DNA from: Pristiophorus japonicus
Lineage: Eukaryota
NCBI RefSeq assembly: GCF_044704955.1
Contig: NC_091995.1
Span: 17,670,001-17,734,000 of the forward strand
DNA length: 64,000 nt
Direction: 5' to 3'
The position numbers and the translations under genes were made by a program. The stretch's first letter is position 1; the number at the start of each line of letters is the position of its first letter. Under the pieces are notes generated by a model. It was not told the DNA's origin, ran no database searches, and saw only the letters and a program-made list of their open reading frames with translations. Below are positions 21,596-61,497 of the stretch, one piece after another.

Positions 21596-21703
21596 TTACT
21601 TCAGCAAAGCGTACAGCACCGCTTCTTGATTCACGCTCCGTCCTGTTTGTTTGCTCTTCTGCAGATTCAGCGTGGCGTATTGCAACTTGTCATCGCCCTC
21701 TCT
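21596..21703 (-). CDS. Terminal cytoplasmic exon with two ITIMs
   Basis: Acceptor ctttaatctcaacag|AGA (phase 0). Reads REGDDKLQYATLNLQKSKQTGRSVNQEAVLYALLK-stop, with ITIMs LQYATL and VLYALL. A minus-strand AATAAA lies at 21303-21308. Confidence 0.75.
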   Translation of the reverse strand, partial: REGDDKLQYATLNLQKSKQTGRSVNQEAVLYALLK

Positions 21704-22539
21704 CTGTTGAGATTAAAGTGATTCAGTGCTGAATATTGTAAATTGAATGGAGTGTTTGGCATCAAACACAGTGCAAAGATTAAAACCGATATGTTGTGCA
21801 TTCTCAATCGAATAGAATGCACCCCATTGAACATTCTACATATAATTAGAATATGAGTCCGTCTCTCAAATATTGTAACAGGATAGAACACGCCATCCTA
21901 AATATTCCTGTTCTTTTGAAGATATTTCAGCCTGTCAAATATTGCACAATTTAAATAATCAAATAAGGGGAAATAGCCGACTGAAATAGCGCATAATTTC
22001 AACTATAATTTTAAAATCCAACCATTTAGAAGGAATTCGCAATTCACACTTCATGAATTCACGAACAGTGGGAGTGTCAGCAGCTGGGAAAGACAGATTG
22101 ACATTTGGGAATAGCTGTTCAGGAGAACTTCTGTTCGAATGAAGGGTCCTAACCCAACGCTTACCCTGTGTTATCTCTTTCAGGTGCTGAACTACTTTGC
22201 ATATTCTGCATTTTCTGTTTTGACTTCAGATTTCCAGCATTTTTGCTGGTTTCCTTCTTATCTCGACTTGTGAAGTGATGTATATGTTTATATATGTATG
22301 TGTTTTAGTGTAGAATCGTGGGTGCCCCAATTTTGGGGTTTATGTTAGGCATCTCTGTGTACCTCCTGTATGTGCATGCACCTGCCTTTTGGTGTGTGCC
22401 TATTTGTATTTGCGATTGTCTGTGTGAGTATGCCTTTCTCTGTGTGTGCAGGCGTTTGAATTGAGATTTAATGTCCTGGTTGGCTCTCTGTCGAATTATA
22501 ACGAATATTTTAAATGCCAGCTCTATTGGAATTTTATTT

Positions 22540-22625
22540 TAAACTTGCCACGCCTGTGCGTAACACTGGCGTTCGGGATGGGCCGCAATGCTAGCTTTAC
22601 GCCTGTGTGGCAAGTTGAGAATATA
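22540..22625. repeat. Short hairpin/MITE remnant
   Basis: AACTTGCCACGCCTGTGCGTAA ... TTTACGCCTGTGTGGCAAGTT form inverted ends. The same terminus occurs at about 29760-29795. Confidence 0.5.
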
Positions 22626-22689
22626 CCCCACAGCTTCAAGAAGAAATGTTGAGGCCGTCCAACCTCGTTTCTTTTTTAGATTGTTACAG

Positions 22690-22745
22690 CCTACGGAGAG
22701 GACTCTTTATATTCTAATCTACCTGGAAACGTAAACAAGAGATCG
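22690..22745 (+). CDS. Cytoplasmic exon with ITIM-like SLYSNL, in inverted orientation (56 bp, phase 1-0)
   Basis: cttttttagattgttacag|CC TAC GGA GAG GAC TCT TTA TAT TCT AAT CTA ... AGA TCG|gtagtt gives (A)YGEDSLYSNLPGNVNKRS. The phases exactly bridge the minus-strand exons at 24707 and 21703. Confidence 0.55.
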
Positions 22746-22849
22746 GTAGTTTTAAAGTAACATAAATAGCCAAAGTCATTGTGCTACATACCCAATTTGG
22801 TCTTCTGCACTCAGAGCTGTCATTATTCCCCTCTATGAAGCATAGAAAA

Positions 22850-23310
22850 AAAAATTTTCCGCGTCTTTCATCATCACCGGACATCACAAAGCGTTATACA
22901 GCGAATAAAGTACTTTTTAAAAAAGCGTAGTTAATGTTGGAAACGCAGCAGACATTTTGCACACAGGTGCCCCACAAACATCTACGTGATCATGAACAGA
23001 TAATCTGCTTTACTGTTGTTGATTGAGGGATATATATTGGCCAGGAGATGACAACTCCCCTGCTCTTCTTCGAAATAGTGCCTGGAATCTTTTAAGTCCA
23101 CAAGGGAGAGCAGACAGGGACTCGGTTAAAGTCTTATCTGAAAGGCACAGCTCCCCCTCCCTTCCCCGCCTCCCTCCGCAGAGCAGCGCTCCTTCAGTAC
23201 TGCTTGGCAGGGTCAGCTTAGATTTTTGTGCTACAAGTCCCTGAAGTGGGACACACACCTACAACCTTTTGACTCAGAAGCGAGGGTGCTACTAACTGAG
23301 CCACGGGAAA
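22850..23310 (-). mobile_element. tRNA-headed DeuSINE-like SINE
   Basis: Head GTGGCTCAGTTAGTAGCACCCTCGC on the minus strand plus a Deu-like core. Further copies at 30360-30710 (-), 50870-51300 (+) and 54135-54555 (+). Confidence 0.7.
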
Positions 23311-24164
23311 TGACCCTGTATAATTTAATTTACTTGAACTGTGTATACAATACAATAGAACGTACTGTACCTTAACAATCGCACTGTAATGCACTGTGTT
23401 ATAAGGTTATAGGATACAGCATAACGTGGTAGAAAACCGTAGAATGCAATTAAATAAAATACAGTAGGAAATAACGCATTGCAGAACAATAAAACGATAC
23501 AATTAGTATGGTCCAACATATAATACTCTAACAATATAAAACAGCCTCAGATTTTTATGTTTAATTATTTACTTTAAACTGGTGAGCAAAGCAATTTGAT
23601 ATGAACGCACCCAGCACTCATACGAGAATAGAGTGACAACTAGGCTAATCTATTATAATATTTGATATATCATTGAAACATACATTACAATATTATGTAC
23701 TAATTTCTCACAAAAAAGCAGCAGTGGAAAGAAAATCTTTCAAAATATTATATTAGCCATATCCCTTAACACCTCAAATTGACTTTGTGACCAAGATGCC
23801 TAAAGTGTGTCACTCAATAGCCATTCTAGAAGCAAGAATTATTGAATCATAGAATCACCCAGTACAAAAGGAGGCTATTCGGCCCAACAGCCCTTGTCGG
23901 CTCTCTGAAGGAGCTATTAATTAGTCCCGCTGCCTTGCTCTTTCCCCCTATCCCTGAAAAGCATCCCTTTTTAAAGTAGTTATCCACTTCCATTTTGAAA
24001 GTTACTGTTAGTTCTGCTCACTCAAACCTCTCTCACAGTACATTCCAGATCATAACCACTCGCTGAGTAAAAAAAACAATCTCCTCATCTCTCCACATGG
24101 CTGTGTTATGCCAGTTATCTTAAATGTGTGTTCTCTAGTTGCCAGACAGAATACAATTTTTTTA

Positions 24165-24540
24165 AATTCACGGATGTGGGCTTTGCTAGCAAGGTCAGTA
24201 TTTATTGCCCCTCCCTAATTGCCCTTGAGAAGGTGCCGACAATCCACCAATTCAGAGGACAGTTAGGAGTCAACCTCATTGCTGTGAGTCTGGAGTCACC
24301 TTAAGACCAGTCCAGGTAAAGACGGCAGATGTCCTTCCCTAAAGAGATATTTCACAATAGTGAACAAGATGGGTTTTTAATGACAATCTGTTAGTTACTA
24401 GCTTTTTATTCCGATTTAGTTCACCTTAATTAATTTAAATTTCCCAGCTGCCGTGGTGAGATTTGAACTCCTGTCTCTGGATTATTCGTCCAGACTTCTA
24501 GGATTATAAGGCCAGTAACTTATCCACTATGGTAGCGTAA
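24165..24540 (-). mobile_element. tRNA-derived SINE (second family)
   Basis: B-box-like GAGTTCAAATC on the minus strand. A paralog lies at 56740-57125. Confidence 0.6.
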
Positions 24541-24706
24541 CGCTAAATAATCAGACCGAACAATACAGAACTCTTTGTCTATGGGTTATAACTGATGGAA
24601 AAGGAAATTAACCAGATTATCAATTAAAATCAAATTAATTCGAAGGAGTAAATGTTGGTTATTTACTAAAAGTGACAGGTTGTGCACAGTTATTTCTGTT
24701 ACCCAC

Positions 24707-24741
24707 CTGTTTCACGGATCACTGCGCAGAGTGGATCTGGT
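24707..24741 (-). CDS. Cytoplasmic micro-exon 2 (35 bp, phase 2-1)
   Basis: cctctgttgcttcag|ACCAGAT...GAAACAG|gtgggt gives RPDPLCAVIRET. Confidence 0.65.
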
Positions 24742-24846
24742 CTGAAGCAACAGAGGACATCAGGAACGTTAGGCATTTAACAAAATAAAATACATTGAAG
24801 AAAAAGAAAGTGGATTCTTAAAAAGTAGTTCTATGTAAACAATTAC

Positions 24847-24868
24847 CTCGTGGGTTGCTGAAGAGCGA
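24847..24868 (-). CDS. Cytoplasmic micro-exon 1 (22 bp, phase 1-2)
   Basis: ttcccctcctcacag|TCGCTCTTCAGCAACCCACGAG|gtaatt gives VALQQPT(R). Phase matches both flanking exons. Confidence 0.65.
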
Positions 24869-25199
24869 CTGTGAGGAGGGGAATATTAAGATAGAACAGT
24901 TAAAGTGCTGAAGTTATTGATTATTTCAGTCTTCTCACATATATCATTGGTATCGAATAAATTTAATCACATTTTAGGGGAAATTTTAACCAAACACACG
25001 GAGGAGCAGACGGGATCGGGTGCAACGTTGGTTTCACACTCCGCCTGATTATTAAATCAGTTGGCGAGCAATATTGGGCGGGATTGAACCCGGCGTTTCA
25101 TCCCATCTCGTTCGTTTCCCACCCGGTGCGTTAAAATGAAATTACCAAAGGATTTGCCAACCACACAGACTTCAGTAGGGTTAAAATTAATGTTGTTAC

Positions 25200-25328
25200 C
25201 TCTCTTACCACGCCGGCTGACAACAACTACAGTGACTATAATGATGATCAGGAGAGACACGGTTCCCGCTGCAACGACGAGTGGTGTGATCTTTGGTTTG
25301 GACTGGTCGTTGCTGCCCACTCTACCAT
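25200..25328 (-). CDS. Stalk + neutral transmembrane exon of inhibitory-type receptor
   Basis: Acceptor tttacacacag|AT, donor AGAG|gtaac, phase 1-1. Reads DGRVGSNDQSKPKITPLVVAAGTVSLLIIIIVTVVVVSRRGKR: an uncharged TM followed by basic stop-transfer residues. Confidence 0.75.
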
Positions 25329-25994
25329 CTGTGTGTAAATATAAAGGTTCATTGTGAGACAGAGCAGTCAAGAGCAGGGCAATTGTTCACATTGAGATTC
25401 ATCAAATGTGATATGAATTCTAATCCCTCTTGACATGGGCGGGTATATTCATACTTAACACTGGGATACTTCAAACTAGGTCATCGATTAAAATGCAAAA
25501 TATCACCGGTGGTCAACTGGAACGTTTCCTACCCTTGAAATAACATTGGGAAAATTTTAATGTAGGAATACTTAATGGGTTGGTGCCAATTTCATTTTGT
25601 TTGAATGAGATGGGGTGGGGTTGGGGGACGGTGGTGAGACGGCCGTATGAGTTCCGTTACCATAGGAAAATGATTAGGCAATTTAACCCCTCAAGTCTGC
25701 TCCGCCATTCAATTAGATCATAGCTAATTTGCAACCTAACTTCATGTTCCTTAGTACCTTTGTTTAACAAAAAGCTATCAATCACAGATTTTAAATTTAC
25801 AATTTACCCAGCATCAGTTGCCATTTGTGAAAGAGAGTGCCAATCTTCTACTACTCTTTGTGTGGAGAAGTGTTCACTCATTTCGCTCTTGAGAATTCTG
25901 GTTCTATATTTTAGACTATGCCCCCGGTCCTAGGCTGCCAAACTAGCTGAAATAGTGCATCTCAGTCTTTCCAATCTGTTCCCCTTAATATCTT

Positions 25995-27735
25995 AGAAAC
26001 ATAGAAACATAGAAAATAGGTGCAGGAGTAGGCCATTCGGCCCTTCGAGCCTGCACTGCCATTCAATGAGTTCATGGCTGAACATGCAACTTCAGTACCC
26101 CATTCCTGCTTTCTCACCATACCCCTTGATTCCCCTAGTAGTAAGGACTTCATCTAACTCCTTTTTGAATATATTTAGTGAATTGGCCTCAACAACTTTC
26201 TGTGGTAGAGAATTCCACAGGTTCACTACTCTCTGGGTGAAGAAATTCCTCCTCATCTCGGTCCTAAATGGCTTCCCCCTTATCCTTAGACTGTGTCCCC
26301 TGGTTCTGGACTTCCCCAACATTGGGAACATTCTTCCTGCATCTAACCTGTCTAACCCCGTCAGAATTTTAAACGTTTCTATGAGGTCCCCTCTCATTCT
26401 TCTGAACTCCAGTGAATACACGCCCAGTTGATCCAGTCTTTCTTGATAGGTCAATCCCGCCATCCCGGGAATCAGTCTGGTGAACCTTCGCTGCACGCCC
26501 TCAATAGCAAGAATGTCCTTCCTCAGGTTAGGAGACCAAAACTGTACACAGTACTCCAGGTGTGGACTCACCAAGGCCCTGTACAACTCTAACAACACCT
26601 CCCTGCCCCTGTACTCAAATCCCCTCGCTATGAAGGCCAACGTGCCATTTGCTTTCTTAACCGCCTGCTGTACCTGCATGCCAACCTTCAATGACTGACG
26701 TACCATGACACCCAGGTCTCTTTGCACCTCCCCTTTTCCTAATCTGTCACCATTCAGATAATAGTCTGTCTCTCTGTTTTTACCACCAAAGTGGATAACC
26801 TCACATTTATCCACATTATACTTCATCTGCCATGCATTTGCCCACTCACCTAACCTATCCAAGTCGCTCTGCAGCCTCATAGCATCCTCCTCGCAGCTCA
26901 CACTGCCACCCAACTTAGTGTCATCCGCAAATTTGGAGATACTCCATTTAATCCCCTCGTCTAAATCATTAATGTACAGTGTAAACAGCTGGGGCTCCAG
27001 CACACAACCTTGTGGTACCCCACTAGTCACTGCCTGCCATTCTGAAAAGTCCCCATTTACTCCTACTCTTTGCTTCCTGTCTGACAACCAGTTCTCAATC
27101 CATGTCAGCACACTACCCCCAATCCCATGTGCTTTAACTTTGCACATTAATCTCTTGTGTGGGACCTTGTCGAAAGCCTTCTGAAAGTCCAAATATACCA
27201 CATCAACTGGTTCTCCCTTGTCCACTCTACTGGAAACATCCTCAAAAAATTCCAGAAGATTTGTCAAGCATGATTTCCCTTTCACAAATCCATGCTGACT
27301 TGGACCTATCATATCACCTCTTTCTAAATGCACTGCTATGACATCCTTAATAATTGATTGCATCATTTTACCCACTACCGATGTCAAGCTGACCGGTCTG
27401 TAATTCCCTGTTTTCTCTCTCCCTCCTTTTTTAAAAAGTGGGGTTACATTGGCTACCCTCCACGCCATAGGAACTGATCCAGAATCAATGGAATGTTGGA
27501 AAATGACTGTCAATGCATCCACTATTTCCAAGGCCACCTCCTTAAGTACTCTGGGATGCAGTCCATCAGGCCCTGGGGATTTATCGGCCTTCAATCCCAT
27601 CAATTTCCTCAACACAATTTCCCGACTAATAAGGATTTCCCTCAGTTCCTCCTCCTTACTAGACCCTCCGACCCCTTTTATATCCGGAAGGTTGTTTGTG
27701 TCCTCCTCAGTGAATACCGAACCAAAGTACTTGAG
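25995..27735 (-). mobile_element. Young 5'-truncated CR1 LINE with uninterrupted RT frame
   Basis: ORF 26092-27771 (559 aa) with NYRPVSLTS, QHGF, DFQKAFDKV, GVPQG and FADDTK; intact 3' UTR and tail. Confidence 0.95.
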
Positions 27736-28615
27736 AGTGTTGTTCCTCCCGCCGAGTTTTCCTGAATTCACTAGACCCTGGAGATAAATGCGGCGCCGAG
27801 CATGAACGATAAAATGGCCCTCTCATATATATGGGATGCTTAAAATAAAACGAACATGTAGATATTAGATTGCCGAATCTGGGTGGTCAACGTGATTGTG
27901 TCGTGGAGTCATCTTTGCATTTAGATGGAGCGCAATGTGCTAATTTCTATTTACACACACAACTATATCTGCCTCTACGTCCATTTACAAGATGACAGTG
28001 AAATGTAACTTATCATAGATGCGTTGACCTGTTTATTCCTAACTTTGGCACGCTTCAATTTCAAAGCTCACGTGTAGCTGTCGTTAAGGGGCAGCAGTCT
28101 TCACCTTGCATACTGTAACTGGGTTAACGACTTTTCCACAGTCCTACCTAAAATGATACACAACTGAATTTAGTTATTATCCTCCATCTATTTATTCTGA
28201 AAAAAATCATTCTCAGGATACAGGTGTCGCAGGGAAGACCTGCATTTATTGCTCATCGTTAATTACGCATCAGAAGGTGATGATGGGCCTTCTTCTTGAA
28301 CCGCTGCAGTCCTTGAGGTGAATGTGCAACCACGGCGCTGTTAGGAAGGGAGTTCCAGTGTTTTGAAAGGAACAGCTATGTAAGACCCTGTCAGGTTCGT
28401 GTGTGACTTGGAGCGGAACATGGAGCTGGTGGTGCTCCCGTGTACCTACTGCCTTTATCCTTCTAGGTGCTGGAGTTCGTGGGTTTGGGAGTTCCAATTG
28501 ATGTAGTGGATAATGTATGTATACCAGCAATATTACTCCCTAGATAGATCCCATATGATTTTGCGCAATTTCATGGGTAAGAGTATCTCCATCAATCCAA
28601 ACTTACCTTCTTCAC

Positions 28616-28957
28616 CACGTTTCACGACCAGTGTTGTGCCGGTTCCGTATGCAGCACTGATTCACGTGAGCTCCACTTTGCAAATATAGAAACCTGTATC
28701 TCGCGGGACCATTTGGATTATTTGAATGGATGCGTTTTCCCTCTGGCAGAAATCCTCTTTGCCTGCCCGGAAAACCCTGCCTCTGTATTCGCCTGTACTG
28801 TTGGAAACTTCAATTCGATGTTTGGCGCCTCGGTGCCATTTGTCGCCGTCGATTCGTTCGTGACCCTCATATGTGCAGACCAGGTCCGCTGTCTGTCCCA
28901 CGGTTTTGGTGAGAGATTGCGGGCTCTGAAATACTGTGATGTTTCCACCAGTAAATG
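28616..28957 (-). pseudogene. NCR3-like V pseudo-exon of the inhibitory-type gene
   Basis: 342 bp, colinear with the intact copy. Acceptor AG is changed to AA (ttgcaa|cattt). In-frame TGA (Gly codon GGA>TGA) at 28662-28664 in CKVELT*ISAAYGTGTTLVV. An alternative donor exists at 28607 (GAAG|gtaagt). Confidence 0.85.
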
Positions 28958-29032
28958 TTGCAAGTGGGCAAAACAGAAAATTTATAAATAAGCAGAGTAC
29001 GGTGGCAATATGTACTTCAGGGAGCAACATAC

Positions 29033-29094
29033 ATTGTGCTCTCCAGGACCAGACACAATAAAGCTAGTTACCCGAGAGCCGATCGGTCTCTCAT
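29033..29094 (-). pseudogene. Degenerate leader-like exon upstream of the 28.6-kb V exon
   Basis: MRDRSALG*LALLCLVLEST followed by gtatgt, then a 75-bp intron to the V exon. It contains an in-frame stop, and its phase (2) does not match the V exon (1). A paralog at about 35781-35843 also has a lost ATG and a stop. Confidence 0.45.
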
Positions 29095-29126
29095 GTTTAG
29101 CCTGTAATCTCTATCTCTTTCAGTCT

Positions 29127-29136
29127 CACTTCCTCT
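29127..29136 (-). promoter_or_regulatory. PU.1/ETS-type motif upstream of leader
   Basis: AGAGGAAGTG on the minus strand, about 35 bp upstream of the leader ATG. A CCAAT box is nearby (ATTGG at about 29163). The motif is mutated in the paralog at about 35878. Confidence 0.3.
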
Positions 29137-31167
29137 CTCACACATACGTACGCACAGGTACGATTGGAACCCATTTATCTCTGTGCGTTTTATGCATAAT
29201 GCGCTCCTATTTTCCCATTCCTAACCATCACTTCTTGATTTACCTTTTCTTCCCTCCCACTATTCCCAGCCTTGATGCTGTCCTGCGCCATGGCCATTGG
29301 CCCATTCACCTAAATGGCTCAATTCAAAATAGGCAACCTCGAAAGCGTCAGCTTCGTTATGGTGACCACCCACCCCCACCTTAACTGCGGGATTGATTAT
29401 ATTACCGGGACAAGATTCATTACCACGGCGCTTAGATTTTAAGATGACTAATCTCTTGGCCGTGAGAATGTCCGCAGGAACCTGATGTTTTTCTTTTAAA
29501 TTGCAGGCGAGCTGATCATGAATATAGAATTGGTTGAATTTACAATCTGGTATCGAGAACCGCAAATAGGTGCTAGCAGTATGCGATTGGACCAGGTTCG
29601 CAGATGAGCTGGTGTACACATACATAAGAAAAAAAAGGGAGAACATCGCTTTGCGTAATTAATAACGTATTCAGTCATGCAAAATTTCATTAAGTCATTA
29701 TGAAATCAATGGACATGATAATCACTCGCTTTCAGTAATGGCGGCCACACCGCCGTGCCAGTTTTACGCCCAGCCGGCAAGTTGATAATCTTCCCAATAT
29801 GGACCCGATGTGTTAGAAATCTGCATGACTGAATTCGTTATTAATTACGCATAGCGATGTTGTCCCTTTTTTTCTTATGTATGTGTACACCAGCTCATCT
29901 GCGAACCTGGTCCAATCGCATACTGCTAGCACCTATTTGCGGTTCTCGATACCAGATGGTAAATTCAACCAATTCTATATTGCTTACTGGAGAACATAGT
30001 GATTACCCAGATAACTACAGCCCAACGCATTCTCACTATAGACGGTGGAATGATTTCAGAAAAGAAATTCAAGTATTGTACAGAGTGGAATATTTGAGTA
30101 ATGCGCAGTGGGAGAGTGAAGCCGGGTTTGTGTCCAGATGTGAGGTCATGGAAATAAAAATGAACTGCATGCTGTATGTACAACTGCAGTTATCTCTCGC
30201 ACATTGTTCTCACTCTCTCGCACCTGCACACTCGCAATCTCTCAAGGACAATTTGCAGAAGACACACACAGGTGGCATAGAGTCTTGGCTTCACCTGTTC
30301 CTTGGGTATGTAATTGGTTATGGGATCGGATGCAGAAATATGTTTTTTCACTGGAAGAAAAAACAGTGGTATTTATATAAAGCATTTCATGACCACCGGA
30401 AGTCTCAAGGCGCTTAGCAGCCAATTAAGTAATTTTGAAGTGTAGTCACTGAAGTAATTTGGGAAACGTGGTCGCCAATTTGCGCATAGCAAGCTCCCAC
30501 AAACAGCAATGTGATAATCACCAGATAATCTGTTTTTGGTATGTTGATTGAGGGATAATTATTGGACAGGACACTGGGGATAACGCCCCTGATCTTCGAA
30601 ATAGTGTCACGGGAACTTTTATGCCCACCTGAGAGAAAAGACGAGGTCTCGGTTTTAAATCTCATCCGAAAGACAGCACCTGCGGCAGTACAGCACCCCC
30701 CTCAGCACTGCTATAATCCTACATAAAATTATACAGAACTGAATATAATTAATAACCTGCATCTATTTATTGTAAAAGAAAATCATTATCAGGATATGGG
30801 TGTCGCTGGGGGACTTGCATTGATTGCCCATCCTTAATTGACGTTGAAAAGGTGGTGATGGGCCTTCTTCTTAAACCGCTGCAGTTGTGATGTGAAGGTT
30901 TTCCCACAGCGTTGTTAGGAAGGTACCTCCAGGGTTTTGAAAGGAACAGCAATACAAGTCCAAATCAGGCTGGCGTGTAACTTGGAAGGGAACATGGAGA
31001 TGGCGATGGCGCCTTCATGCACCTGCTACCCTTCTCCTTCTAGGTGGTGCAGATCGAGGGTTTTGGAATTCCAGTTGACTAAAATTACTCTCTCGAAAAA
31101 TCCCATATGATTGCATGCAATTACATTGCTAAGAATATATCCATCAATCCAAACTTACTTTATTCAC

Positions 31168-31486
31168 CACGACTCACGGTCAGTGTTGTCCCGGTTCCGA
31201 CTGCAGCACCGGTTCCCACAAGCTCCACTTGGCAAAAATAGGACCCTGTAACTTCCGGTTTCAGCTGGATTATTCTAATGGACGCGTTTTTCCTAGGTGG
31301 AAAGCCTCTCTACTTGCCCTGATCAGCCTGCCTCACTATTCGGCTGTACTGTTGGAAACTTCAATTCCCTGTTTGGAGCATCGATGCCATTGGTAGCTGC
31401 CGTTTCGTGCTAAACTCTCATATGTGCAGACCAGGTCCGCTGTCTCTCCCACGGTTTTGGCGAGAGATTGCGAGCTCTGAAATACT
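31168..31486 (-). pseudogene. NCR3-like V pseudo-exon
   Basis: Reads FQSSQSLAKTVGETADLVC...W...EVSNSTAE, then TAG TGA. A 1-bp deletion precedes KNASIRII. Ends SYFCQVELVGTGAAVGTGTTLTV. The 5' end and acceptor are partly deleted. Confidence 0.85.
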
Positions 31487-35615: not shown

Positions 35616-36929
35616 CAAAATTACCCCCGAGTGAGTTATTTCCATTGCTTTCCCGATATCTTTGCTATATTTTACTTCAAGTATTTATCCATATTCCCTT
35701 TTGAAGGCTGCTATTGAATCTGTATCCACCAGCCTATCGGGCAGAGTATTGTAGAATATATACTTCAGAGAGCAAAATACATTATGCTGTCCTCGACCAG
35801 ACACAATAAAGCTACTTGCCCGAGAGCCAATCAATCTCTCACGCTTAGCCTGTAATCTTTCTCTATGTCTTTCAGTCTCGCTTTCTCTCTGACACACACG
35901 TACGCACACGTACGATTGGAACCAATTTATCTCTGTGTGTTTTATGCATAATGCTCTCCTCAACTCTCTTTTCCCAATTCTTATCATCACCTCTTGATTT
36001 ACCTTGTCTTCCCTCCCAATATTCCCAGCCTTGATGCATCCTGCGCCAAGGGCCATTGGCCTTTCACCTAAATGCCTCAATTCAAAATAAGCAACCTCGA
36101 AAGCGTTAGCTTCTCTATGGTGACGTCCCCCACCCCCCCCCCCCCCCCCCCCGCTTAACTGTGCGACTGATTATATTACCGGGACATGATTCATTATGCT
36201 GAGATTTTAAACTGGTCAATCTCCTGTCAGAGAATGTCCAGAAGAACCTGATGTTTTTTTTAATTGCTGGCGAGCTGATGATGCACATATAATTGGTGAA
36301 ATGTACAAGCTGGTATCGAGAACCGCAAATATCTGATAGCAGAATAAGATTGGATCAGGTTCACAGATGAGCTAGTCTACACATACATAAGAAAAAAAGG
36401 GAGGACATCGCTGTGGGTAATTAATAACGAAGTAAGTCATGCAATATTTCATTCAAGTCATCATGAAATCAATGAAATTCGTAATCACTCCCTTTTAATA
36501 ACGGGCGGCCACACCTCAGCGCCAGTTTTACATCCAGGCGGCATGTTGACAATCTCCCCTCTATATTTACATGGACCTTATGTTTCAGAAGTTGATATTT
36601 CAACGCTGCTTAACGTGGAACATAGTGATTGCATAGGTACCTACAGCCCAATTCTTTCTCCCTGTAGTCTGTGGAATAATTTCAGAAAATAAATTCAGGT
36701 GCTGCAGAGAGAGGAATATTTGAGTAATGCGCAGTGGGTGAGTGAAGCCGAATTAGTGTCCGGATGTGGGATAATGGAAATAAAAATGAACTGCATACTG
36801 TGTGTACAACTGAAGTTGTCTCTCGAACGGTGACGATCTTTTACGTCCACCTGAGAGAGCAGACAAAGTCTCGGTTTTAAATCTCATCCGAAAGACGATT
36901 CCTCCGACAGTACAGCACTCCCTTCAGCA

Positions 36930-52689: not shown

Positions 52690-54015
52690 GAAGGAGCAGC
52701 AGGACAATTGGAAAATGATAATGCAGTCAAGCAGAGTCAGCATGGTTTTTTGAAAGGGAAATCTCGTTTGACAAATTTTCTGGAGTTCTTTGAGGATGTA
52801 AGGAGCAGGGTGGATAAAGGGGAACCTATGGATGTGGTGTATTTGGATTTCCAGAAAGCATTCGATGAGGTACCACATAAAAGGTTACTGCACAAAATAA
52901 AAGCTCACGGGGTTGTTGGTAATTTATTAGCATGGATAGCGGACTGGCTAACTAACAGAAAACAGAGAGGCAGGATAAATGGGTCATTTTTAGGTTGACA
53001 AACGTTAACTGGTGGGGTGCCACATGGATCGTAACTGGGTCCTCAACTATTTACAATCTATATTAATGACTTGGATGAAGGGACCGAGTATAATGTAGCC
53101 GAGTTTGCTTCTGAAAAAAAGATGGGTGGGAAAGCAAGTTGCGAAGAGCACACATATATTCTGCAAAGGGATATAGACAGGCTAAGTGAGTGGGCAAACG
53201 TTTCGCAGATGGAATATAATATAGGAAAGTGTGTGGCTATCTACTTTGGCAGGAAAAATAAAAAAACAAGTTATTATTTAAATGGAGAGACATTACAAAA
53301 TGCTGCAGTACAGAGGGCCCTATGGGTGCTTGTGCTTTAACACAAGAAGTCATGCAGTTACTACAATTAGTCAGGAATGCAAATGGAATGTTGGCCTTTA
53401 TTGCAAGGGGATGGAGTATAAAAGCAGAACGTCCTGCTACAACTGTACAAGGTATTGGTGAGACCACACTTAGAGTACATTTTGTTCTCCTTATTTAAGT
53501 AGCCAAAAACTTGTTTAGAGGTAATTCAGAGAAGGTTCACTACGATCATTCCTGAGATGAAGGGGTTGACTTATGAAGAAAGGTTGAGTAGGTTGTTTCT
53601 GTACTTATTGGAGTTTAGAAGAATGAGAGGTAATCTTATTGAAACTTATAAGATACTGATGGGGCTCAACAAGGTAAATGCAGAGAGGATGTTTCCACTC
53701 GTGGCGGAATCTAGAACTAGAGGGCATAGTTTAAGAATAAGGGGTCGCCTGTTTAGCATTAAGATCAGGAGATATTTCTTCTCTCAGGGGGTCGTATATC
53801 TGTAGAATTATCTGCCCCAGAGAACTGTGGAGGCTGGGTGACTGAATATATTTAAGGTGGAGCTAGTCAGATTTTTGAATGATAAGGGAGTGAAGGGTTA
53901 TGGGGAGCGGGCAGAGAAGTGAGCTGGGCACAAGATCAGATCAGCTATGATCTTAGGAAATGGCGAAGTAGGCTCGATGGGCGAAATGCGTCTGCTCCTA
54001 TTTCTTATGTTCTTA
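52690..54015 (+). mobile_element. CR1 RT + 3' UTR fragment
   Basis: SQHGFLKGKS, DFQKAFDEVPH, LEFRRMRGNLIE. Confidence 0.9.
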
Positions 54016-55289
54016 TTTTAAACATTCGCTCAAGACCTTTCATGATGTATTTCTGTTTAACACGATTTAAGAGAAATATGTTCTAGAATGTCCAAAACAA
54101 TTTTCGTTTTTGGAATGAAAATGATTCAATTGATATCTGTGGCTCAGTATGTAGCACCCACGTATCTGATTCAGAGGTGGTGGGATCAAGTGAAGCACAT
54201 AATTCCAAGCTGACATTCCAGTGCTGAGGGACCCCTGCACTGTTGGATGAGACATTATACCAAGGCCCCGTCTGCCCTCTCAGGTGGACATTAACGTTTC
54301 CAGGGCATGATTGCGAATAAGAGCAGTGGAGTTATCTCCGGTTTCCTGGCCAATAATTGCCCCTCAATCAACATAACAAAAACAGATTATCTGGTCAATG
54401 TCACATTTCTGTTTGTGTGAGATTGTTGTGCACATGTGGCTGCCACGTTTCCTGCATTACAACAGTGACTACACTTCAAAAGTACTTCAGTGGCTGTAAA
54501 GCAGTTTGGGACATTGAGCGTTCATCAAAGGAGCTACAGTAAATGCAATCTTTCTTTTTGTAGTTTAGGCTGGTTTCAAGACGTTTGTAGTATTTATCTG
54601 TGTTAATCTGACACTATCTCTCAATTATATAACTGATGATTGCAGTATCTTCATAGCAATCCTATTTTGAGGAACACGACCAGATTATCTGTCGCATCCG
54701 TATCAGTTCAATTATTTAACTCTGAGCTGCATATAATAAACACAAGGATGGATTTTCACAGGGGTATCTCCCACCCTAACATCAGCAGAAATTCTTCGAA
54801 AACCCTGGAGGCTCAGTGTAAACTAACCCAGAGTGTCAATCCATCTCTATTTCAATTTTTTAAAATTACGGTACTTCAGAATTGTTAATATCACCCTTTT
54901 GAGGCATGGCATGTGTATTAGTCATGTCGTGATGCGTTAAGTAGGAATTAATGATGGTAGCACTTAATTTGACTTAGCAAGAGCTGATGAATATAAATAT
55001 CCCTGATCACAAAGACTGTGTTTACGGCCATCGTTAAGTATGGCCCAATTAGTTCTTTGCAAATGTACTACAGAGCTCAAAGTAGTCTCAGTTTATAGAT
55101 ATAAAATAAGTTAGCACATGGCATAATACCACAAGTTTTCCCCTGTAAGTAGAATCGCTTAGATTTTCCTTGCAGGTTCTTCTCATCTCGCAGAAGATCC
55201 AGAGAAATCTTAGCAAAGCAATAAACCTGTAAGGAGAAAGCTCGAACTGGAACTGGTTTACAATTTTAAGTAAAATAGCTGGATGCTTT

Positions 55290-56110
55290 TGGAGGAAATA
55301 CCAATTCAATATTGGGAAGACGGAAACCATTGTCTTTGGTCCCCCCACAAACTTCGCTCCCTCGCCACCGACTCAATTCCTTTTGCCGGTAGCTCTCTGT
55401 TGTTGAACCAGACTGTTCCCAACTTTGCTGTCATATTCGACCCTGAAATGAGCTTCGACCGCATATCCACAGCATAATTAATACAACTTATTTCCACCTT
55501 CGAACATCGCCCGTCTCTGCCATTGCCTCATCCATGCCTTTGTTACTTCTGATCTTCACCATTCCAAAGCACTCCTGGCTGGCCACCCACAATTTATCCT
55601 ATGTAAATTTGAGGTCATCCAAAACTCGGCTGCTGATGTCCTAACTTGCAACAAATCTCGTTCACCCATCACCTCCTGTATTCGCTGACCTACATTGGCT
55701 CCCGGTTAAGCAACATCTCAATTTCAAAATTCTCATCTTTGTTTACAAATCCGTCCATGGTCTCTCCTCTCTCTGTCTCTGTAATCACCTCCAGCCTCAG
55801 AAACCACCAAGATATCTGTGCTCTTCAAATTCTGCTCTCTTGAGCATCTCTGATTGTAATAGCTCAACCCTCGGTGGCCGTGCCTTTAGCTGCCTAGGCC
55901 CTAAGCTCTGCAACTCCCTCTGCAAACATTATTGCCTTTCTACCTCTCTTTCTTCTTTGAAACCTATCGATTTGACCAAGCTTTTGGTCATTTACCGTAA
56001 TGTTTTCTTAAGCTACTCGGTAGCAAATATTTTTCTGATAATATCACTGTGAAATGCCTTGGGACGTTATACTATGTTAAGTGAACTATATAAATACAAG
56101 TTCTTGTTGT
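55290..56110 (+). mobile_element. L2-like LINE 3' fragment
   Basis: Homologous to 2075-2740 and ends with a TTGTT-type tail. Confidence 0.7.
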
Positions 56111-57231
56111 GTTTCATTAGACACCCTGAGCACTTTGCAGACCCATTTCATTGCATTTTAAATGACTTGGGAGCAGATATTCTCCTCTCCCCGCTTTAAA
56201 ACACTTAACTTTGGGAGGGAGCTCGCCTTTATCAAACACATTCGCAGCTCAGATCCACAATTAAAGGAGCCATTCTGTCCAGTTCTGCTTGAACATCAGA
56301 ACATAAGAAATAGGAGCAGGAGTCAGCCATTCGTCCCCTCGAGCCTGCTCCGCCATTCAAAGGATCATGGCTGACCTTCCACCTCAACTCAACAATCTCC
56401 ATATCCCTTGATTCCCCAAGAGTCAGCCTTAGCTATACTCAACAACTCAGCATCCACAGCCCTCTGGGGAAGAGGTCTCCAAACATTCACAACCCTCTGC
56501 GTGAAGACATTCCTCCTCATCTCAGTCCTAAATGGCCTACCCCTTATCCTGAGACAATGCCCCCTAGTTCGTGACTCTCCAGCCAGGGGAAACAACTTCT
56601 CAGCATCTATCCTGTCAATCCCCTTCAAAATCTTGTATGTTTCATGCTTGGCTGGAACTCAAGTGCAGTTACCCGTGTCACATTGGTTACTTCAGTATGT
56701 CTGCATCCTACATTCACTAATGATAAACCTTCTTTAAACTCATTCATGGCATGTGGGCGTTGCATTTATTTATGTCACAAGGCCAGCATTTATCACCCAT
56801 GCCTAATAGCCCTTGAGTGGCTTGCTAGCCATTTCAGAGGGCAGTTAAGAGTCAAGGACGTTGCTGTGGGCCTGGAGTCAAATATAGGCCAGATCGTGTT
56901 AGGGCAGCAGATTACCTTCCCTAAAGGACTTTAGTAAACCAGATGAGTTTTTACGACAATCCTGTAGTTAAATGGTTACTGTTACTGATACCAGCTTTTT
57001 ATTCCAGATGTATTTAACTGAATTCAAATTCCCCAATGGCCATGGTGGGATTTGAACTCATGTCTTCAGATTATTAGTCCAGGCTTCTAGTAATGTCCAG
57101 TAACATTACCACTGTTCTACCGTACATCCATTTTATAGAACCAGAGTCTAATTGTGCTATATAATCATAAAATACATTTACATGCGTTCCAAACAATTAA
57201 TAATACATATATTGACATTCGCTACAATTAC

Positions 57232-57373
57232 CTCTTCTGATGGAAGCAGATAACGATGATGATTCCAAAAGTGGCCAGTAAAGCTATCACTACTGCACGA
57301 ACACGCCATAGTATCCAGACATCGCTGAAGAAGCTTATAGTCTCTTCGTTGCTCGTTACTTCACATTCATCAC
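57232..57373 (-). CDS. Stalk + transmembrane exon of activating-type NCR3-like receptor (Arg in TM)
   Basis: Acceptor aaatttcatag|GT, donor AAGAG|gtaatt, 142 bp, phase 1-2. Translates (C)DECEVTSNEETISFFSDVWILWRVRAVVIALLATFGIIIVICFHQK. In frame with the V exon at 59130-59471. Confidence 0.75.
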
Positions 57374-57529
57374 CTATGAAATTTTATAACAGATTTATAA
57401 ATTCTCTATATCTCTTTCTAGTCCAAGGCAATGAGCAACACAGTGGGGCTAAGACACCCTCTAATCTGAATGTTCGTTTTCATCATCCACGGCACTAACC
57501 TGGCAGGGTAGATTACTCATCCTTTAAAT

Positions 57530-58340
57530 CGTAGAATCTTAGCATTTTCTTACAGCACAGAAGGAGGCCATTTTAGCCCATTGTGTCAGTGCTGGCTGAC
57601 AAAGAGTTATCCAGCCTAATCTCACTTTTCCGCTCTTGGTCCGTAGCCTTGTAGGTTATGGAACATCCCGTTGTTATCCAGGTACGCTTTAAATCTGGTG
57701 ACGCTTTCTGCATCTACCACACTTTCAGGCAGTGAGTTCTAGACCTCCACCACCCTCTGGATGATAAAAGTCTGCCTCAAATCTTCTCTAAACCTCCTAA
57801 CAATTATTTAAAATCTATGCACCCTAATGCTTGTCCTTTCTGCTAATAGGTCCTTCGTATCCACTCTATCTAGGCTGCACATAATGTTATACACCTCAAT
57901 AAAGTCTCGAGGTGCTCCAAAGAGAACAACCCCAGCCTATCTAATCTTTCCTCAAAGCAAAATATCCAGCCCTGCCAACATCTTCATAAATCTCCTCTGT
58001 ACCCTCTCCAGTGCAATCATATCTTATTTGTAATGCGATGACCAGAGCTGCATCAGTGCTCTAGCTTTGGCTTAACTAGTATTTTATACAGTTGAGGCAT
58101 AACCTCCCTGCTCTTGTATTCAATGCCTCAGATAATAAAGGCATATATTACGTATGCCTTCTTAACCACCTTATTTACGTGTCCTGCTACCTTCAGGGAT
58201 TTGTGGACATGCATTCCAAAGTCCCTTTGTTCCTCTGCACTTCACAGTGTCTGACCATTTATTGTATATTCCCTTGCCTTGTTATACCTCCATAAATGCA
58301 TTACCTCACACCTCTGCAGATTAAATTACATTTGCCACTG
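57530..58340 (-). mobile_element. CR1 3' fragment in the V-TM intron
   Basis: Same family as the 1-1065 and 3590-4300 segments. Confidence 0.75.
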
Positions 58341-59129
58341 TTTTGACTACTTGTGTTTCATTCTATTAATTAGCGCCTAGGTGGTAAAAGTGAATATCTG
58401 TCCCGTTTCTTTTGTTGCCACACGTCACTTTTCAAAAAATAATCAAATATGAAGATTTGTTGCTTGGTGCCTTGCTTAATGTGCCAATCTCTGCAGTTTC
58501 CTCATCCCTTCATCACTGGCCCCTGTCTCTCATAAAGACTAGCCACATATCCGAGTTAGACAAAAACAGTTGCAATAGTACCTTGTTCAGATTAACGACG
58601 GACAAAGTAAAGGCAATTGCACAACTTCAGATCAATCATCTATTGTGGAAAAGATCCAACCTTAAGTTTGCAAGTGATGCCATGGAAGCATTGAGGTAGA
58701 TTATTGCATCCAATTCTGGGCAGAACACTTAAGAAATTGCGTCAAGTCCTTGACGGAGTTGCAGAGAAGATTTACCAGAAAGGTACCAGGGACGAGGGCA
58801 TTTCGGTCACCTGGAATATCCAAAGGACACAGTTTTAAGGTAATTGGTAAAAAAAAATAAGAGGGGGTGGGCGTGGGGCGGGGCGGTGTTATTTTTGTGT
58901 TATGCTCTCGGATGAACTGCCTGAAACTGCGATGGGTGCAGATTCAACACTAACTTTCAAAAGGGATTTGGATAAAAACATAAAAAGAAAGCCTTGGGGT
59001 CTTTATAATAACCAGGTTAAGGCGTGTGCTCAGCAATGTCACAAACAAGAGGGGGAGGGGGAGGGGGGATCGCAGGCTAAGCTCACCAAGAGTAGCTTTT
59101 TGGCTAGAAATGTTAAATAACAAAGTTAC

Positions 59130-59471
59130 AGTGTCTCACGATCAGGGTTGTGCCGATTCCGTATGCTTCACCGATTCCCATGAGCTCCACTTTACAAAGA
59201 TAGAAGCCCATATCTTCCGGTTTCAGCTGGATTATTCTAATCGACGCATTTTTCCTCTGGCGGAAATCCTCCTTACTTGCCCCCAGCACCCTGCCTCTGT
59301 ATTCTGCTGTATTGTTGGAAATTTCATTTCCCTGCTCGGAGCCTCGGTGCCACCTGTAGCCGCCGACTCCTGCGGTACCCTCATACGTGCAGACCAGATC
59401 CGCTGTCTGTCCCACGGTTTTGGTAAGAGATTGCGGCCTCTGAAATACTGTGATATCTCCAACAGTAACTG
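59130..59471 (-). CDS. NCR3: Intact NCR3/NKp30-like Ig V(J)-domain exon (342 bp, phase 1-1)
   Basis: Acceptor ttcacccatttatag|CA, donor CACT|gtaact (weak). Open frame AVTVGDITVFQRPQSLTKTVGQTADLVCTYEGTAGVGGYRWHRGSEQGNEISNNTAEYRGRVLGASKEDFRQRKNASIRIIQLKPEDMGFYLCKVELMGIGEAYGIGTTLIVRH. It has B-strand Cys, C-strand Trp, DxGxYxC and a J-like GxGTxLxV. EISNNTAEYRGRV and CKVELMGIG resemble NKp30 EVRNGTPEFRGRL and CRVEVLGLG. No leader exon was found in the window. Confidence 0.8.
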
Positions 59472-60559
59472 CTATAAATGGGTGAAGTAAATGAAATGCA
59501 AAGTAGGTGATGTGTTTGGCCTTTGAAATTATTGCTTCCTATATTAGACATGAAGGCTCACAGCATAAAGTTTTGGTTGAGGGTGGAGGGCGTTCCACGA
59601 CTCTCCAAATGGCAATTTTCAGGATACATTGTTAAAATATATTTAGAAAAACGTGTTAATGCAGTGAAATTGAGTGTATATAGCCTGTGTTGTTAATTGG
59701 TGCGATAAAGCCTGCAATGAGAAAATGTCCCTCAGTACATCGAAGATCAACCCTTTGTTACACTAACTCACTCCAAAGCATTTAATTGTAATCTGTGTAT
59801 CCCCAATATGGACTTCTATTGCACGTTGTATGAATTAGTTTTCAGACAAACACGTTGCTCTTGAATTTAGTTTACAATATCATTCTACTTTCATAGCTTG
59901 GAAGGAATAATGGTCGTGCAATTTATCTGTACCATTTAACACGAATTTCTCCCACCGCTCAATAACTACCTTATTTCAAGCCTAAAACGCTTATCTTTTC
60001 TCACATCTCGTCTCTTTCAATCATCTATTGGGGCAATAGCCAACCTTATGTTTCAGTTGATGTGATCAATGCATTGACTTAGATTATTGCGTCCAATTCT
60101 GGGCACTACACTTTAGAAAAATGCGTAAAGTCCCTGGAAGGGTTGCACAGGCTGGGTAATTGAATGTATTTAAGGTGGAGATGGACAGATTTTTGAAAGA
60201 GAAGGATGTAAAGGGTTATGGAGAACAGGCGGGATAGTGGAGTTGAGGCGAGGATCAGATCAGCCATGAGCTTCTTGAATGGCACAGCAGGCTCGAGCGG
60301 CTAAATGGCCAACTCCTGCTCCTATTTCTTATGATCTTATATGTCCGTATGTCCTGTTATATGAATCATTTCACATTTAGAAAGCTGTCCATTCTGTACA
60401 ATTGATTGTTTAATACCCGATTTGTTTATCCATATGCATATCACAAACATCTAAGAGCATTTAAATCTGACAAATGAAAAAATATAACAATGCATTACAA
60501 GAGTAGCTTGCTATATTTCCAATTTGTACTCTCATCTTGCAATTGGAAATCGACATAAC

Positions 60560-61085
60560 AGAAAATAACCGGAGATCACACTTTAGGAAAGACGTGAAGG
60601 CCTTAGAATGGGTGCAGGAAAGATTTAGAAGAATGATTCCAGGGATGAGGGACTTCAGATGCATGGATGGACTGGAGAAGCTGGTGTTGTTCTCCTTAGA
60701 GCAGAGAAGGTTGAGAGGAGATTTGAAAGAGGTTTTCAAGATCATGCGGGATCTGGACAGAATTGATTTAGAGAAACTGTTCCCAATGGCAGAAGGGTCG
60801 AGAACCAAAGGACACAGACTTAAAGTGATTGGCAGAAGAACCAAAGGCGACATGAGGAAAAACGTTTTCACACAGCCAGTGGTTAGGATCTGGAATGCAC
60901 TACCTAAAAGAATGGTGGAGGCAGAAACAATTGACTCTTTCCAAAGGGAATTAGATAAGTACGTGAATGAGCATTTTTTGCAGGACTACTGGTAAAGGAC
61001 GGGTGAGTAGAACTAGCTGACGTGGTCTTGCAGAGAGAGCCGGCACAGGCTCGTTCGGTCGAATGGCCTCCTTCTAAGCTGGCAT
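60560..61085 (+). mobile_element. CR1 3' fragment
   Basis: HFRKDVKALEWVQERFRRMIPG...RIWNALP. Confidence 0.85.
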
Positions 61086-61157
61086 TGTTCGCCTTAGAGC
61101 AGTGAAGGTTACGCGTAAATATAACTTCTAGGCTATAAATGTAAATAATAATTTTAT

Positions 61158-61497
61158 CAGTTTCCACTTTCACAGTTGTACCATTTCCGTATGTGGCACC
61201 TATTCCCATGATATCCAGTTCGCAAAAGTAGAACCCTGTATCTCCCGGTTTCAACTGGATTATTCTAATGGACGTGTTTTTACTCTGGCGGAAACCCTCT
61301 TCACTTGCCCCAAATATCCTGTCTCTGAATTCCGCTGTACTGTTGGAAACTTCAATTCAGTGTTTGGAGCCTCGATGCCACCTGTACCCGCTGATTCCCG
61401 TGGGACCCTCATGTGCAGACCAGGTCTGCTGTCTCTCCCACAATTTTGGTGAGAGATTGCAGGCTCTGAAGTATTGTGATGTTTCCAACAGTAACTG
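61158..61497 (-). pseudogene. NCR3-like V pseudo-exon
   Basis: Paralog of 59130-59471. Has a 2-bp deletion after the first Cys codon pair (TGC ACA T GAG), an in-frame TGA at 61357-61359, and donor GT mutated to AT (ACTG|ataaaa). C-terminal part reads DTGFYFCELDIMGIGATYGNGTTVKV. Confidence 0.85.

What the first reader, a model, noticed from the sequence alone, without database searches (positions are those of the whole stretch)
21596..61497. Paired activating/inhibitory NKp30-like receptor cluster
Seen: four homologous VJ-type exons and two distinct signalling modules, one with an Arg-containing TM and one with a neutral TM plus ITIMs. Established: mammalian NKp30 is a single-copy activating receptor whose TM Arg binds FcR-gamma/CD3-zeta, while paired receptor families (KIR, LILR, NITR) combine similar ectodomains with opposite signalling. 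Inference: this is a KIR-like paired-receptor system built from NKp30-type domains in a cartilaginous fish, under active birth-and-death turnover.
Basis: partly seen in the sequence, partly recalled or inferred. Interest (0 to 1): 0.8.

Follow-up and report, generated by a model that had tools for sequence, protein, structure and literature searches.

The report
Shark NKp30-family receptor cluster, mostly decayed
This stretch of a shark genome holds four copies of the NKp30-type sensing exon, one "activating" membrane anchor and one "inhibitory" tail, but three of the four sensing exons are broken and this mixed family is already known in sharks, so it is an ordinary new locus.

Summary
All features lie on the minus strand: four homologous V-J exons, one Arg-bearing transmembrane (TM) exon, and one neutral TM exon followed by a tail with two ITIMs.

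Only one V exon (V59) is intact. V61 and V31 each have a frameshift and stops. V28 has lost its splice acceptor and carries an in-frame TGA.

The inhibitory gene is otherwise a complete 7-exon unit, matching annotated horn-shark, catshark and bamboo-shark proteins. It is probably a pseudogene.

The activating unit is V59 plus the Arg-TM exon 1.75 kb downstream. The TM exon is a significant match to the Arg-TM of NCR3-family proteins (E 3e-4 against all window ORFs). However, no leader lies in the window, the V59 donor is weak, and no transcript could be checked.

V59 is NKp30-like by sequence, tree and fold, and is 66-67% identical to nurse shark NCR3.

Nurse-shark NCR3 GenBank entries, which a later paper lists as nurse-shark NCR3 genes, already include charged-TM and tyrosine-tail forms. 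Lizard and lungfish annotations also show both designs.

This scan has already reported such pairs elsewhere in the same genome.

Verdict: a new member of a known kind. The paired reading is only partly supported at this locus. The assembly gap lies in an intergenic LINE fragment.

The parts
61165..61495 (-). V61: pseudo V-J exon upstream of V59. It has a 2-nt deletion (~61412) and CGA>TGA, with no usable donor. Its 5' intron flank is 78% identical to that of V59.
59130..59471 (-). V59: the only intact V-J exon. The acceptor is ttatag|CAG (a NAGNAG, matching two horn-shark isoforms). The ORF carries Cys/Trp/DxGxYxC and the J-like motif YGIGTTLIV. The phase-1 donor CACT|gtaact is weak, but it sits at the same 'V-[KR]-H + 1 nt' boundary as protein P0163, annotated as Pristiophorus japonicus (Japanese sawshark).
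57228..57373 (-). TM A: stalk and Arg-containing TM exon. The acceptor ttcatag|GT is phase 1. It encodes (C)DECEVTSNEETISFFSDVWILWRVRAVVIALLATFGIIIVICFHQKR followed by TAA. It is probably the terminal coding exon.
56979..57124 (-). tRNA-derived SINE copy downstream of TM A. It contains the first AATAAA (57003), about 225 nt after the stop.
44687..44913 (.). Assembly gap inside a plus-strand CR1-like LINE 3' fragment, in the intergenic spacer.
36463..36828 (-). Degenerate copy of the leader region of gene B, 80-83% identical. It reads RKNWAVGTYAITMF and has no ATG. It is the 5' end of a truncated duplicate unit.
31175..31485 (-). V31: pseudo V-J exon with a 5' deletion, two stops and a frameshift. 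Its 3' flank (30717-31171) is 75% identical to the flank downstream of V28.
29988..30030 (-). Gene B exon 1, the leader: MRWAVVIWVITMFS, with donor A|gtaagc in phase 1. It matches the horn-shark leader MDWAAVTWAIAIFS.
28607..28957 (-). Gene B exon 2, V28. It is 69% aa identical to V59 and has a perfect donor GAAG|gtaagt. Both acceptor AGs are lost and there is an in-frame TGA at 28662-28664.
25209..25328 (-). Gene B exon 3: stalk and neutral TM, (D)GRVGSNDQSKPKITPLVVAAGTVSLLIIIIVTVVVVSRR. It is homologous to the stalk/TM of nurse shark NCR3 QTT61898.1.
24847..24868 (-). Gene B exon 4: a 22-nt micro-exon encoding VALQQPT (compare horn-shark ATRQQPA).
24707..24741 (-). Gene B exon 5: a 35-nt micro-exon encoding RPDPLCAVIRET (compare RPDPINAEIPE and SDPLYAEMHEGE). 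The Tyr of relatives is Cys here.
22792..22832 (-). Gene B exon 6: a 41-nt micro-exon encoding EGNNDSSECRRPNW (compare horn-shark ETNNSSERRGTNG).
21596..21703 (-). Gene B exon 7: REGDDKLQYATLNLQKSKQTGRSVNQEAVLYALLK followed by a stop, with two ITIMs (LQYATL, VLYALL). It is 59-66% identical to the tails of horn-shark and catshark proteins.

Best explanation
The window is a repeat-riddled piece of the shark NCR3 (NKp30) multigene cluster. It contains three things, all on the minus strand.

(1) Gene A: the 3' part of an activating-type gene.
- It comprises a dead V exon (V61), an intact V exon (V59), and 1.75 kb further on a terminal exon encoding a Cys-containing stalk, a TM helix with Arg near its outer end, and a 4-residue tail.
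- Its leader must lie upstream, beyond the window's high-coordinate end.
- If expressed, the Arg would pair with the TM Asp of an ITAM adaptor (CD3-zeta/FcR-gamma type), as in mammalian NKp30. This step is inferred.

(2) A truncated duplicate: a degenerate leader plus the dead V31 exon.

(3) Gene B: a 7-exon inhibitory-type gene.
- It has a leader, V28, a neutral TM exon, three micro-exons and a two-ITIM last exon.
- Every exon except V28 is intact and has canonical splice sites. V28 has lost its acceptor and carries a nonsense codon.
- In this assembly it is therefore most likely a fairly recent pseudogene. Its intact relatives would recruit SHP-type phosphatases through the ITIMs (inferred).

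Both signalling designs of the family are therefore present, but this locus is not demonstrably a working pair.
For: V exons and their lesions.

NKp30 identity of V59:
- Pfam V-set, E 2.4e-11.
- Best solved-structure sequence hits are human NKp30, E 1.6e-12, against SIRP at 6e-9.
- AlphaFold model with pLDDT 93.8. The top four fold hits are NKp30 chains, TM-score 0.81-0.87 and rmsd 1.8-2.4 A, against about 4 A for SIRP.
- In the tree, V59 and V28 are sisters inside a 97* clade that includes nurse shark NCR3 QTT61898.1. That clade sits in a 97* cartilaginous-fish clade, which joins tetrapod and lungfish NCR3 (support 85). SIRP lies elsewhere.

Gene B exons: each was matched one by one to horn-shark XP_067865395, catshark XP_038671257 and bamboo-shark proteins, with consistent phases.

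TM A:
- A profile of 17 family Arg-TM segments, built without TM A, ranks it first of 1586 window ORFs: 17.3 bits, E 3e-4. The next hit is the TM B exon at 6.9 bits.
- None of 3000 same-composition shuffles reaches that score.
- The best single match is sturgeon NCR3-like.
- The acceptor is phase-compatible.
- The V59 donor sits at the same boundary as in sawshark P0163.

Both designs already exist in the family:
- Nurse shark QTT61904.1 has a Lys-TM and a 3-residue tail. QTT61898.1 has a neutral TM and a Tyr tail.
- Podarcis has an Arg-TM form and an ITIM form with near-identical V domains.
- Lungfish has an ITIM form.

Against: - No RNA run was listed for this DNA, so no splice junction is shown.
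- No leader for gene A was found between 59470 and 64000.
- The V59 donor CACT|gtaact lacks G at both -1 and +5. The stronger ATC|gtgaga is in phase 0 and would read into a stop in TM A.
- V59-V28 dN/dS is 0.55, which is only weak constraint.
- TM A shows no significant pairwise match to the Lys-type TMs of nurse shark or sawshark.
- The V28 lesions could be allelic or assembly errors. This could not be tested.
- The scaffold join across the gap is unverified.
Confidence: 0.72

Rival explanations
1. A working paired system. V59 with TM A is an expressed activating receptor. Gene B is an expressed inhibitory receptor, because the TGA is an assembly error or one allele and V28 uses the cryptic in-phase acceptor cctgaag|TA at ~29010.
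For: - All six non-V exons of gene B are intact with good splice sites.
- A phase-1 AG about 55 nt upstream keeps V28 in frame.
- V59 and V28 are 69% identical and sisters in the tree.
- Other agents report transcribed pairs elsewhere in this genome. I did not check those reports.
Against: - V28 carries two independent lesions, and V31 shares the first lost AG.
- No transcripts could be examined.
- Gene A has no leader in the window.
Confidence: 0.15
2. Everything in the window is dead. V59 is an orphan exon that stays open only by chance, and TM A is a relic exon no longer spliced to anything.
For: - The V59 donor is weak, and the degraded 3' flank is shared with dead V61.
- There is no leader.
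- Three of four V exons are dead.
- The region is saturated with LINE and SINE insertions.
- At another locus of this genome a proposed Arg-TM failed as an exon (I did not check this).
Against: - V59 has no stop or indel, although it is about 19% diverged from every other copy.
- Exon identity across lineages (81%) far exceeds flank identity (40-50%). This argues for past constraint or gene conversion.
- TM A keeps its ORF, its acceptor and the family motif.
Confidence: 0.3
3. V59 is the membrane-proximal V exon of a multi-V receptor. The leader and further V exons would lie beyond the window end, so the product has two or more V domains on the Arg-TM anchor.
For: - Multi-V NCR3-like proteins are annotated in Mobula (5 V domains), horn shark (3), bamboo shark (2 V plus Arg-TM, P0006) and sawshark (2 V plus Lys-TM, P0163).
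- A first-reader note places a leader and a V-exon series starting 3.3 kb beyond the window end (unchecked).
Against: - The exon next upstream, V61, is broken and would have to be skipped.
- There are no data from outside the window.
Confidence: 0.3
4. The Arg-TM ORF is a chance hydrophobic ORF and not an exon.
For: - It is short (48 codons).
- Its polypyrimidine tract is poor.
- Pairwise BLAST to Lys-type TMs is not significant.
Against: - Profile E 3e-4, a clear outlier among 1586 window ORFs.
- 0 of 3000 shuffles reach its score.
- The strand, position and phase are right, downstream of the only intact V exon.
Confidence: 0.08

Closest known systems
Nurse shark (Ginglymostoma cirratum) NCR3 family. 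GenBank QTT61898.1 and QTT61904.1 carry the NCR3 name. PMC12227049 lists MT914154-914161 as nurse-shark NCR3 genes. The family paper is Kinlein et al., Immunogenetics 2021;73:333.
   Same: - Single-exon V-J domain. V59 is 66-67% identical to QTT61898.1 and lies in the same 97* clade.
- The stalk/TM of gene B is homologous to QTT61898.1.
- The family contains a charged-TM short-tail member (QTT61904.1) and neutral-TM tyrosine-tail members.
   Different: - This is a different species and locus.
- Here the charged residue is Arg and fits the Arg-type profile shared with sturgeon, reptile and mammalian NCR3. It does not fit the Lys-type of QTT61904.1.
- Three of the four V exons here are dead.
Horn shark (Heterodontus francisci) XP_067865395.1, catshark (Scyliorhinus canicula) XP_038671257.1, and bamboo shark (Chiloscyllium) GCC38504.1 and LOC122541165. 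All are inhibitory-type NCR3-like proteins.
   Same: - Same exon-by-exon architecture as gene B: leader, V, neutral TM, micro-exons and a two-ITIM end (xQYAxLN...AVLYAxxK).
- 59-68% identity.
   Different: Those are intact annotated genes. Gene B has a disabled V exon, and the YxxM tyrosine of exon 5 is Cys.
Human NKp30 (NCR3; PDB 3NOI, 3PV6, 6YJP)
   Same: - Best solved match by sequence and by fold.
- Shared J-like GxGT strand.
- Arg near the outer end of the TM, and a short tail.
   Different: - About 30% identity.
- Mammals have a single activating gene with no ITIM paralogue.
- Ligand and adaptor are unknown for the shark genes.
Paired receptor families: KIR, LILR, SIRP alpha/beta, teleost NITR
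   Same: Similar ectodomains are combined with either a charged TM and short tail, or a neutral TM and ITIMs. These families are tandem clusters with pseudogenes.
   Different: - The V domain lineage differs: SIRP lies in a separate clade, and neither KIR nor NITR appears among the best 60 sequence matches to solved structures.
- Ectodomain identity here is only 69%.
- At this locus the inhibitory partner is broken.

Membership tests
NKp30/NCR3 (vertebrate) | One V-set Ig domain on a single exon, with a germline-joined J-like strand (GxGTxLxV) and canonical Cys-Trp-Cys | tested here: met
   V59 has C27, W40, Y90 and C92, the motif YGIGTTLIV, and Pfam V-set E 2.4e-11.
NKp30/NCR3 (vertebrate) | Closer to NKp30 than to other V domains (SIRP, TCR/Ig, CD28 family) | tested here: met
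   - Sequence: NKp30 E 1.6e-12 against SIRP 6e-9 and TCR/IgL about 1e-4.
- Fold: the top four hits are NKp30, rmsd 1.8-2.4 A.
- Tree: V59 groups with NCR3 of tetrapods and lungfish, support 85, with SIRP apart.
- CD28/CTLA4 and NITR sequences were not in the tree.
NKp30/NCR3 (vertebrate) | TM helix with Arg near the outer leaflet and a short cytoplasmic tail | tested here: met
   The TM A exon at 57228-57373 scores E 3e-4 against the Arg-TM profile, and 0 of 3000 shuffles reach it. Its splicing to V59 is not shown.
NKp30/NCR3 (vertebrate) | MHC linkage | not testable with these tools
   Apart from the receptor exons, I saw only transposon-like ORFs in the ORF lists of the window.
NKp30/NCR3 (vertebrate) | Binds B7H6-type ligand and signals through CD3-zeta/FcR-gamma | not testable with these tools
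   This needs protein work.
Shark NCR3 multigene family | V domain clusters with the deposited nurse shark NCR3 sequences | tested here: met
   V59 and V28 lie in a 9-row clade (97*) with QTT61898.1. Identity is 66-67%.
Paired activating/inhibitory receptor pair (KIR-like) | Two intact genes with similar ectodomains | tested here: not met
   - V28 lacks its acceptor and has an in-frame TGA.
- V59 and V28 are 69% identical in amino acids.
- Gene A has no leader in the window.
Paired activating/inhibitory receptor pair (KIR-like) | One partner has a charged TM and short tail; the other has a neutral TM and ITIMs | tested here: met
   Both modules are present as exons, TM A and the TM B/ITIM exons.
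Paired activating/inhibitory receptor pair (KIR-like) | Both partners transcribed, with V spliced to the respective TM exon | not testable with these tools
   The look-up of sequencing runs listed no run, so read laying could not be used.

The most novel reading that the evidence does not exclude
V59 and TM A form the end of a gene in which one upstream leader serves a tandem array of NKp30-type V exons. These exons would be chosen alternatively and spliced onto a single Arg-TM exon. That would be germline exon-choice diversification of an activating innate receptor, rather than a fixed multi-domain protein. Nearby ITIM genes would provide the inhibitory counterparts.
Probability: 0.08. Interest if true: 0.65.

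Novelty: new member of a known kind. Interest (0 to 1): 0.3.

Why it matters
- It adds one more locus to the map of the large NCR3 (NKp30) cluster of a shark.
- The Arg-type TM module shared with sturgeon, reptile and mammalian NKp30 is present in a cartilaginous fish. Here it sits next to V domains of the subfamily that otherwise carries ITIM tails.
- This supports the view that both signalling designs of NKp30 are ancient, and that mammals kept only the activating one.
- It does not open a new question. The multigene nature of shark NCR3 is published, and other loci of this genome show the pairing more cleanly.

Tried and rejected
- The search for homologous proteins with V59 alone gave nothing, because of the length window. 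With nurse shark P0005 and horn-shark P0004 as queries it returned only known shark proteins. None is encoded in this window.
- The look-up of sequencing runs on 57200-59500 listed no run. Read laying was therefore never called, and expression is untested.
- Kinlein 2021, Flajnik 2012 and Ohta & Flajnik 2015 are not held. A search for 'XMIV', the Xenopus NKp30-like genes as I remember them, found nothing relevant.
- The leader search for gene A was negative, both by homology and by an ATG-hydrophobic-GT pattern.
- A 155-nt similarity between the DNA downstream of TM A and an intron of gene B looked like gene homology. It is a tRNA-derived SINE.
- Pairwise BLAST of TM A against the Lys-type TMs of P0163 and P0049 is not significant.
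- No second copy of either TM exon or of the ITIM exon exists in the window.
The gap was not filled or looked up.

Full report
**What is there**

Everything relevant is on the minus strand. A tblastn search with the one intact V exon finds four, and only four, homologous V-J exons. About 150 family proteins used as queries found no further one.

- V59 (59130-59471) is open. It has a good NAGNAG acceptor (ttatag|cag). It carries the Ig V hallmarks and a J-like strand, YGIGTTLIV.
- V61 (61165-61495) has a 2-nt deletion and a CGA>TGA stop.
- V31 (31175-31485) lacks its first ~22 nt and has two stops and a frameshift.
- V28 (28607-28957) has a perfect donor. Both AGs of the family acceptor are mutated, and GGA>TGA sits in the G strand at 28662-28664.
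- The four exons are 78-81% identical to each other. Flanking sequence separates two lineages, V59/V61 and V28/V31. The duplications are therefore old, and the exons have been held more similar than their surroundings.

**Signalling modules**

*Gene B.* I mapped it exon by exon against horn-shark, catshark and bamboo-shark proteins. It is a 7-exon unit:
- leader, 30030-29988;
- V28;
- neutral stalk/TM exon, 25328-25209;
- micro-exons at 24868-24847, 24741-24707 and 22832-22792;
- last exon, 21703-21596, ending ...LQYATLNLQKSKQTGRSVNQEAVLYALLK.

All phases fit, and all splice sites are canonical except the V28 acceptor. With two lesions in its only ectodomain exon, gene B is most likely a pseudogene in this assembly. 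An allelic or assembly error cannot be excluded without reads.

*Truncated duplicate.* Upstream of gene B lies a degenerate copy of the leader region (36463-36828), then LINE insertions, then V31 and a copy of the V28 downstream flank. This is a truncated tandem duplicate.

*Gene A.* The exon TM A (57373-57228) lies 1.75 kb downstream of V59. It has a phase-1 acceptor. It encodes a Cys-containing acidic stalk, the helix WILWRVRAVVIALLATFGIIIVICF, the tail HQKR and a stop.

Another agent had rejected a proposed Arg-TM elsewhere in this genome, so I tested this one:
- A profile built from 17 Arg-TM segments of family members, without TM A, was run against all 1586 six-frame ORFs of the window. 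It ranks TM A first at 17.3 bits, E 3e-4. The next hit is the other TM exon at 6.9 bits, and the rest is noise.
- The profile aligns the family Arg with the second Arg of WRVR.
- None of 3000 same-composition shuffles reaches the score.
- The best single match is sturgeon NCR3-like.

Weak points of gene A:
- No leader lies between 59470 and 64000.
- The phase-compatible V59 donor, CACT|gtaact, lacks G at -1 and +5. It does sit at exactly the 'V-[KR]-H + 1 nt' boundary used by sawshark protein P0163, whose other isoform (P0013) appears to end by read-through at that point.
- The first AATAAA after the stop lies in a SINE.

**What family**

- V59 hits human NKp30 first among solved structures (E 1.6e-12, against SIRP at 6e-9).
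- Its AlphaFold model (pLDDT 93.8) matches four NKp30 chains best, with TM-score 0.81-0.87 and rmsd about 2 A. SIRP comes next at about 4 A.
- An exhaustive HMMER search returned 326 relatives. The closest are:
  - horn-shark NCR3-like, 68%;
  - nurse shark NCR3 QTT61898.1, 66-67%;
  - bamboo shark, 65%;
  - catshark.
- In a 157-domain tree, V59 and V28 are sisters inside a 97* clade with those proteins. That clade lies inside a 97* cartilaginous-fish clade, which joins tetrapod and lungfish NCR3 (support 85). SIRP is separate.

**Is pairing new?**

No. Sorting the tails of the retrieved proteins and naming them shows both designs across the family:
- Nurse shark QTT61904.1 has a Lys-TM and a 3-residue tail. 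QTT61898.1 has a neutral TM and a Tyr tail.
- Bamboo shark P0006 and basking shark P0074 have Arg-TMs.
- Podarcis has an Arg-TM NCR3 and an ITIM NCR3-like with near-identical V domains.
- Lungfish NCR3-like has the same ITIM tail.

The shark NCR3 family paper (Kinlein et al. 2021) could not be read here, so I do not cite its wording. I cite only the GenBank entries, which carry the NCR3 name, and a later paper (PMC12227049) that lists MT914154-914161 as nurse-shark NCR3 genes. Other agents of this scan have already described paired, ITAM-bearing and mosaic NCR3 genes 0.2-1.7 Mb away in the same genome. They call that genome Japanese sawshark. I did not verify those reports or the species.

**Gap**

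The N run at 44687-44913 interrupts a plus-strand CR1-like LINE 3' fragment, between ...RGLDGVD and PLAETLRTRGH.... The flanks are collinear. Intact copies have about 4-5 codons between those motifs. The flanks could still belong to two different copies. The gap touches no receptor exon, but the continuity of the 'cluster' across it is unproven. I did not fill it.

**Limits**

- No RNA run was listed, so read laying was not used and no junction is shown.
- MHC linkage, ligand and adaptor cannot be addressed here.

**Verdict**

However, this locus is largely decayed, the V-to-TM joins are unproven, and the concept is already known. It is a new member of a known kind, of modest interest.

Noticed in passing
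window 29521-29686 and 29817-29981: A ~165-nt inverted repeat, 91-98% complementary, sits in the leader-V28 intron. Its right arm ends 7 nt after the leader exon (5 nt after the donor GT). The degenerate leader copy at 36.3-36.8 kb carries both arms too, so the repeat predates that duplication.
   Followed up: partly
window 22690-22755 (+): An opposite-strand ORF with AG/GT borders reads IVTAYGEDSLYSNLPGNVNKRS and includes an ITIM-like SLYSNL. It lies inside the last intron of gene B. It is a separate finding of the scan (s1-879422). ITIM-like hexamers are very frequent by chance here: about 50 occur in 6 kb.
   Followed up: no
window 56979-57124 (-), 24388-24539 (-), ~25090 (-): tRNA-derived SINE copies carrying ...GAGTTCAAATCCCACCA...GGAATAAAAAGCTGG. 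One supplies the only nearby AATAAA after the TM A stop. Another tRNA-like stretch lies in the TM B-exon 4 intron.
   Followed up: partly
window 24707-24741 (-): Exon 5 of gene B reads DPLCAVI where bamboo shark and nurse shark relatives read DPLYAEM or NPLYADM. A YxxM-type tyrosine motif of the relatives is therefore lost here.
   Followed up: no
window 29988 / 25328 (-): The leader donor and the TM B acceptor are both in phase 1. Skipping the acceptor-less V28 would therefore give an in-frame, V-less membrane protein with an ITIM tail. This is purely a reading-frame observation.
   Followed up: no
protein P0165 (Polypterus senegalus KAG2469052.1): A bichir gene model merges an NCR3-like 2-V Arg-TM protein with PRRC2A (BAT2). 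From memory, that is an MHC class III gene in mammals, which would hint at MHC class III linkage of the family in a basal ray-finned fish.
   Followed up: no
window 1-21000, 32000-56000: The rest of the window is dense CR1/L2-like LINE and other retroelement debris on both strands. It includes a 559-aa RT ORF at 26092-27771 inside the V28-TM B intron.
   Followed up: no
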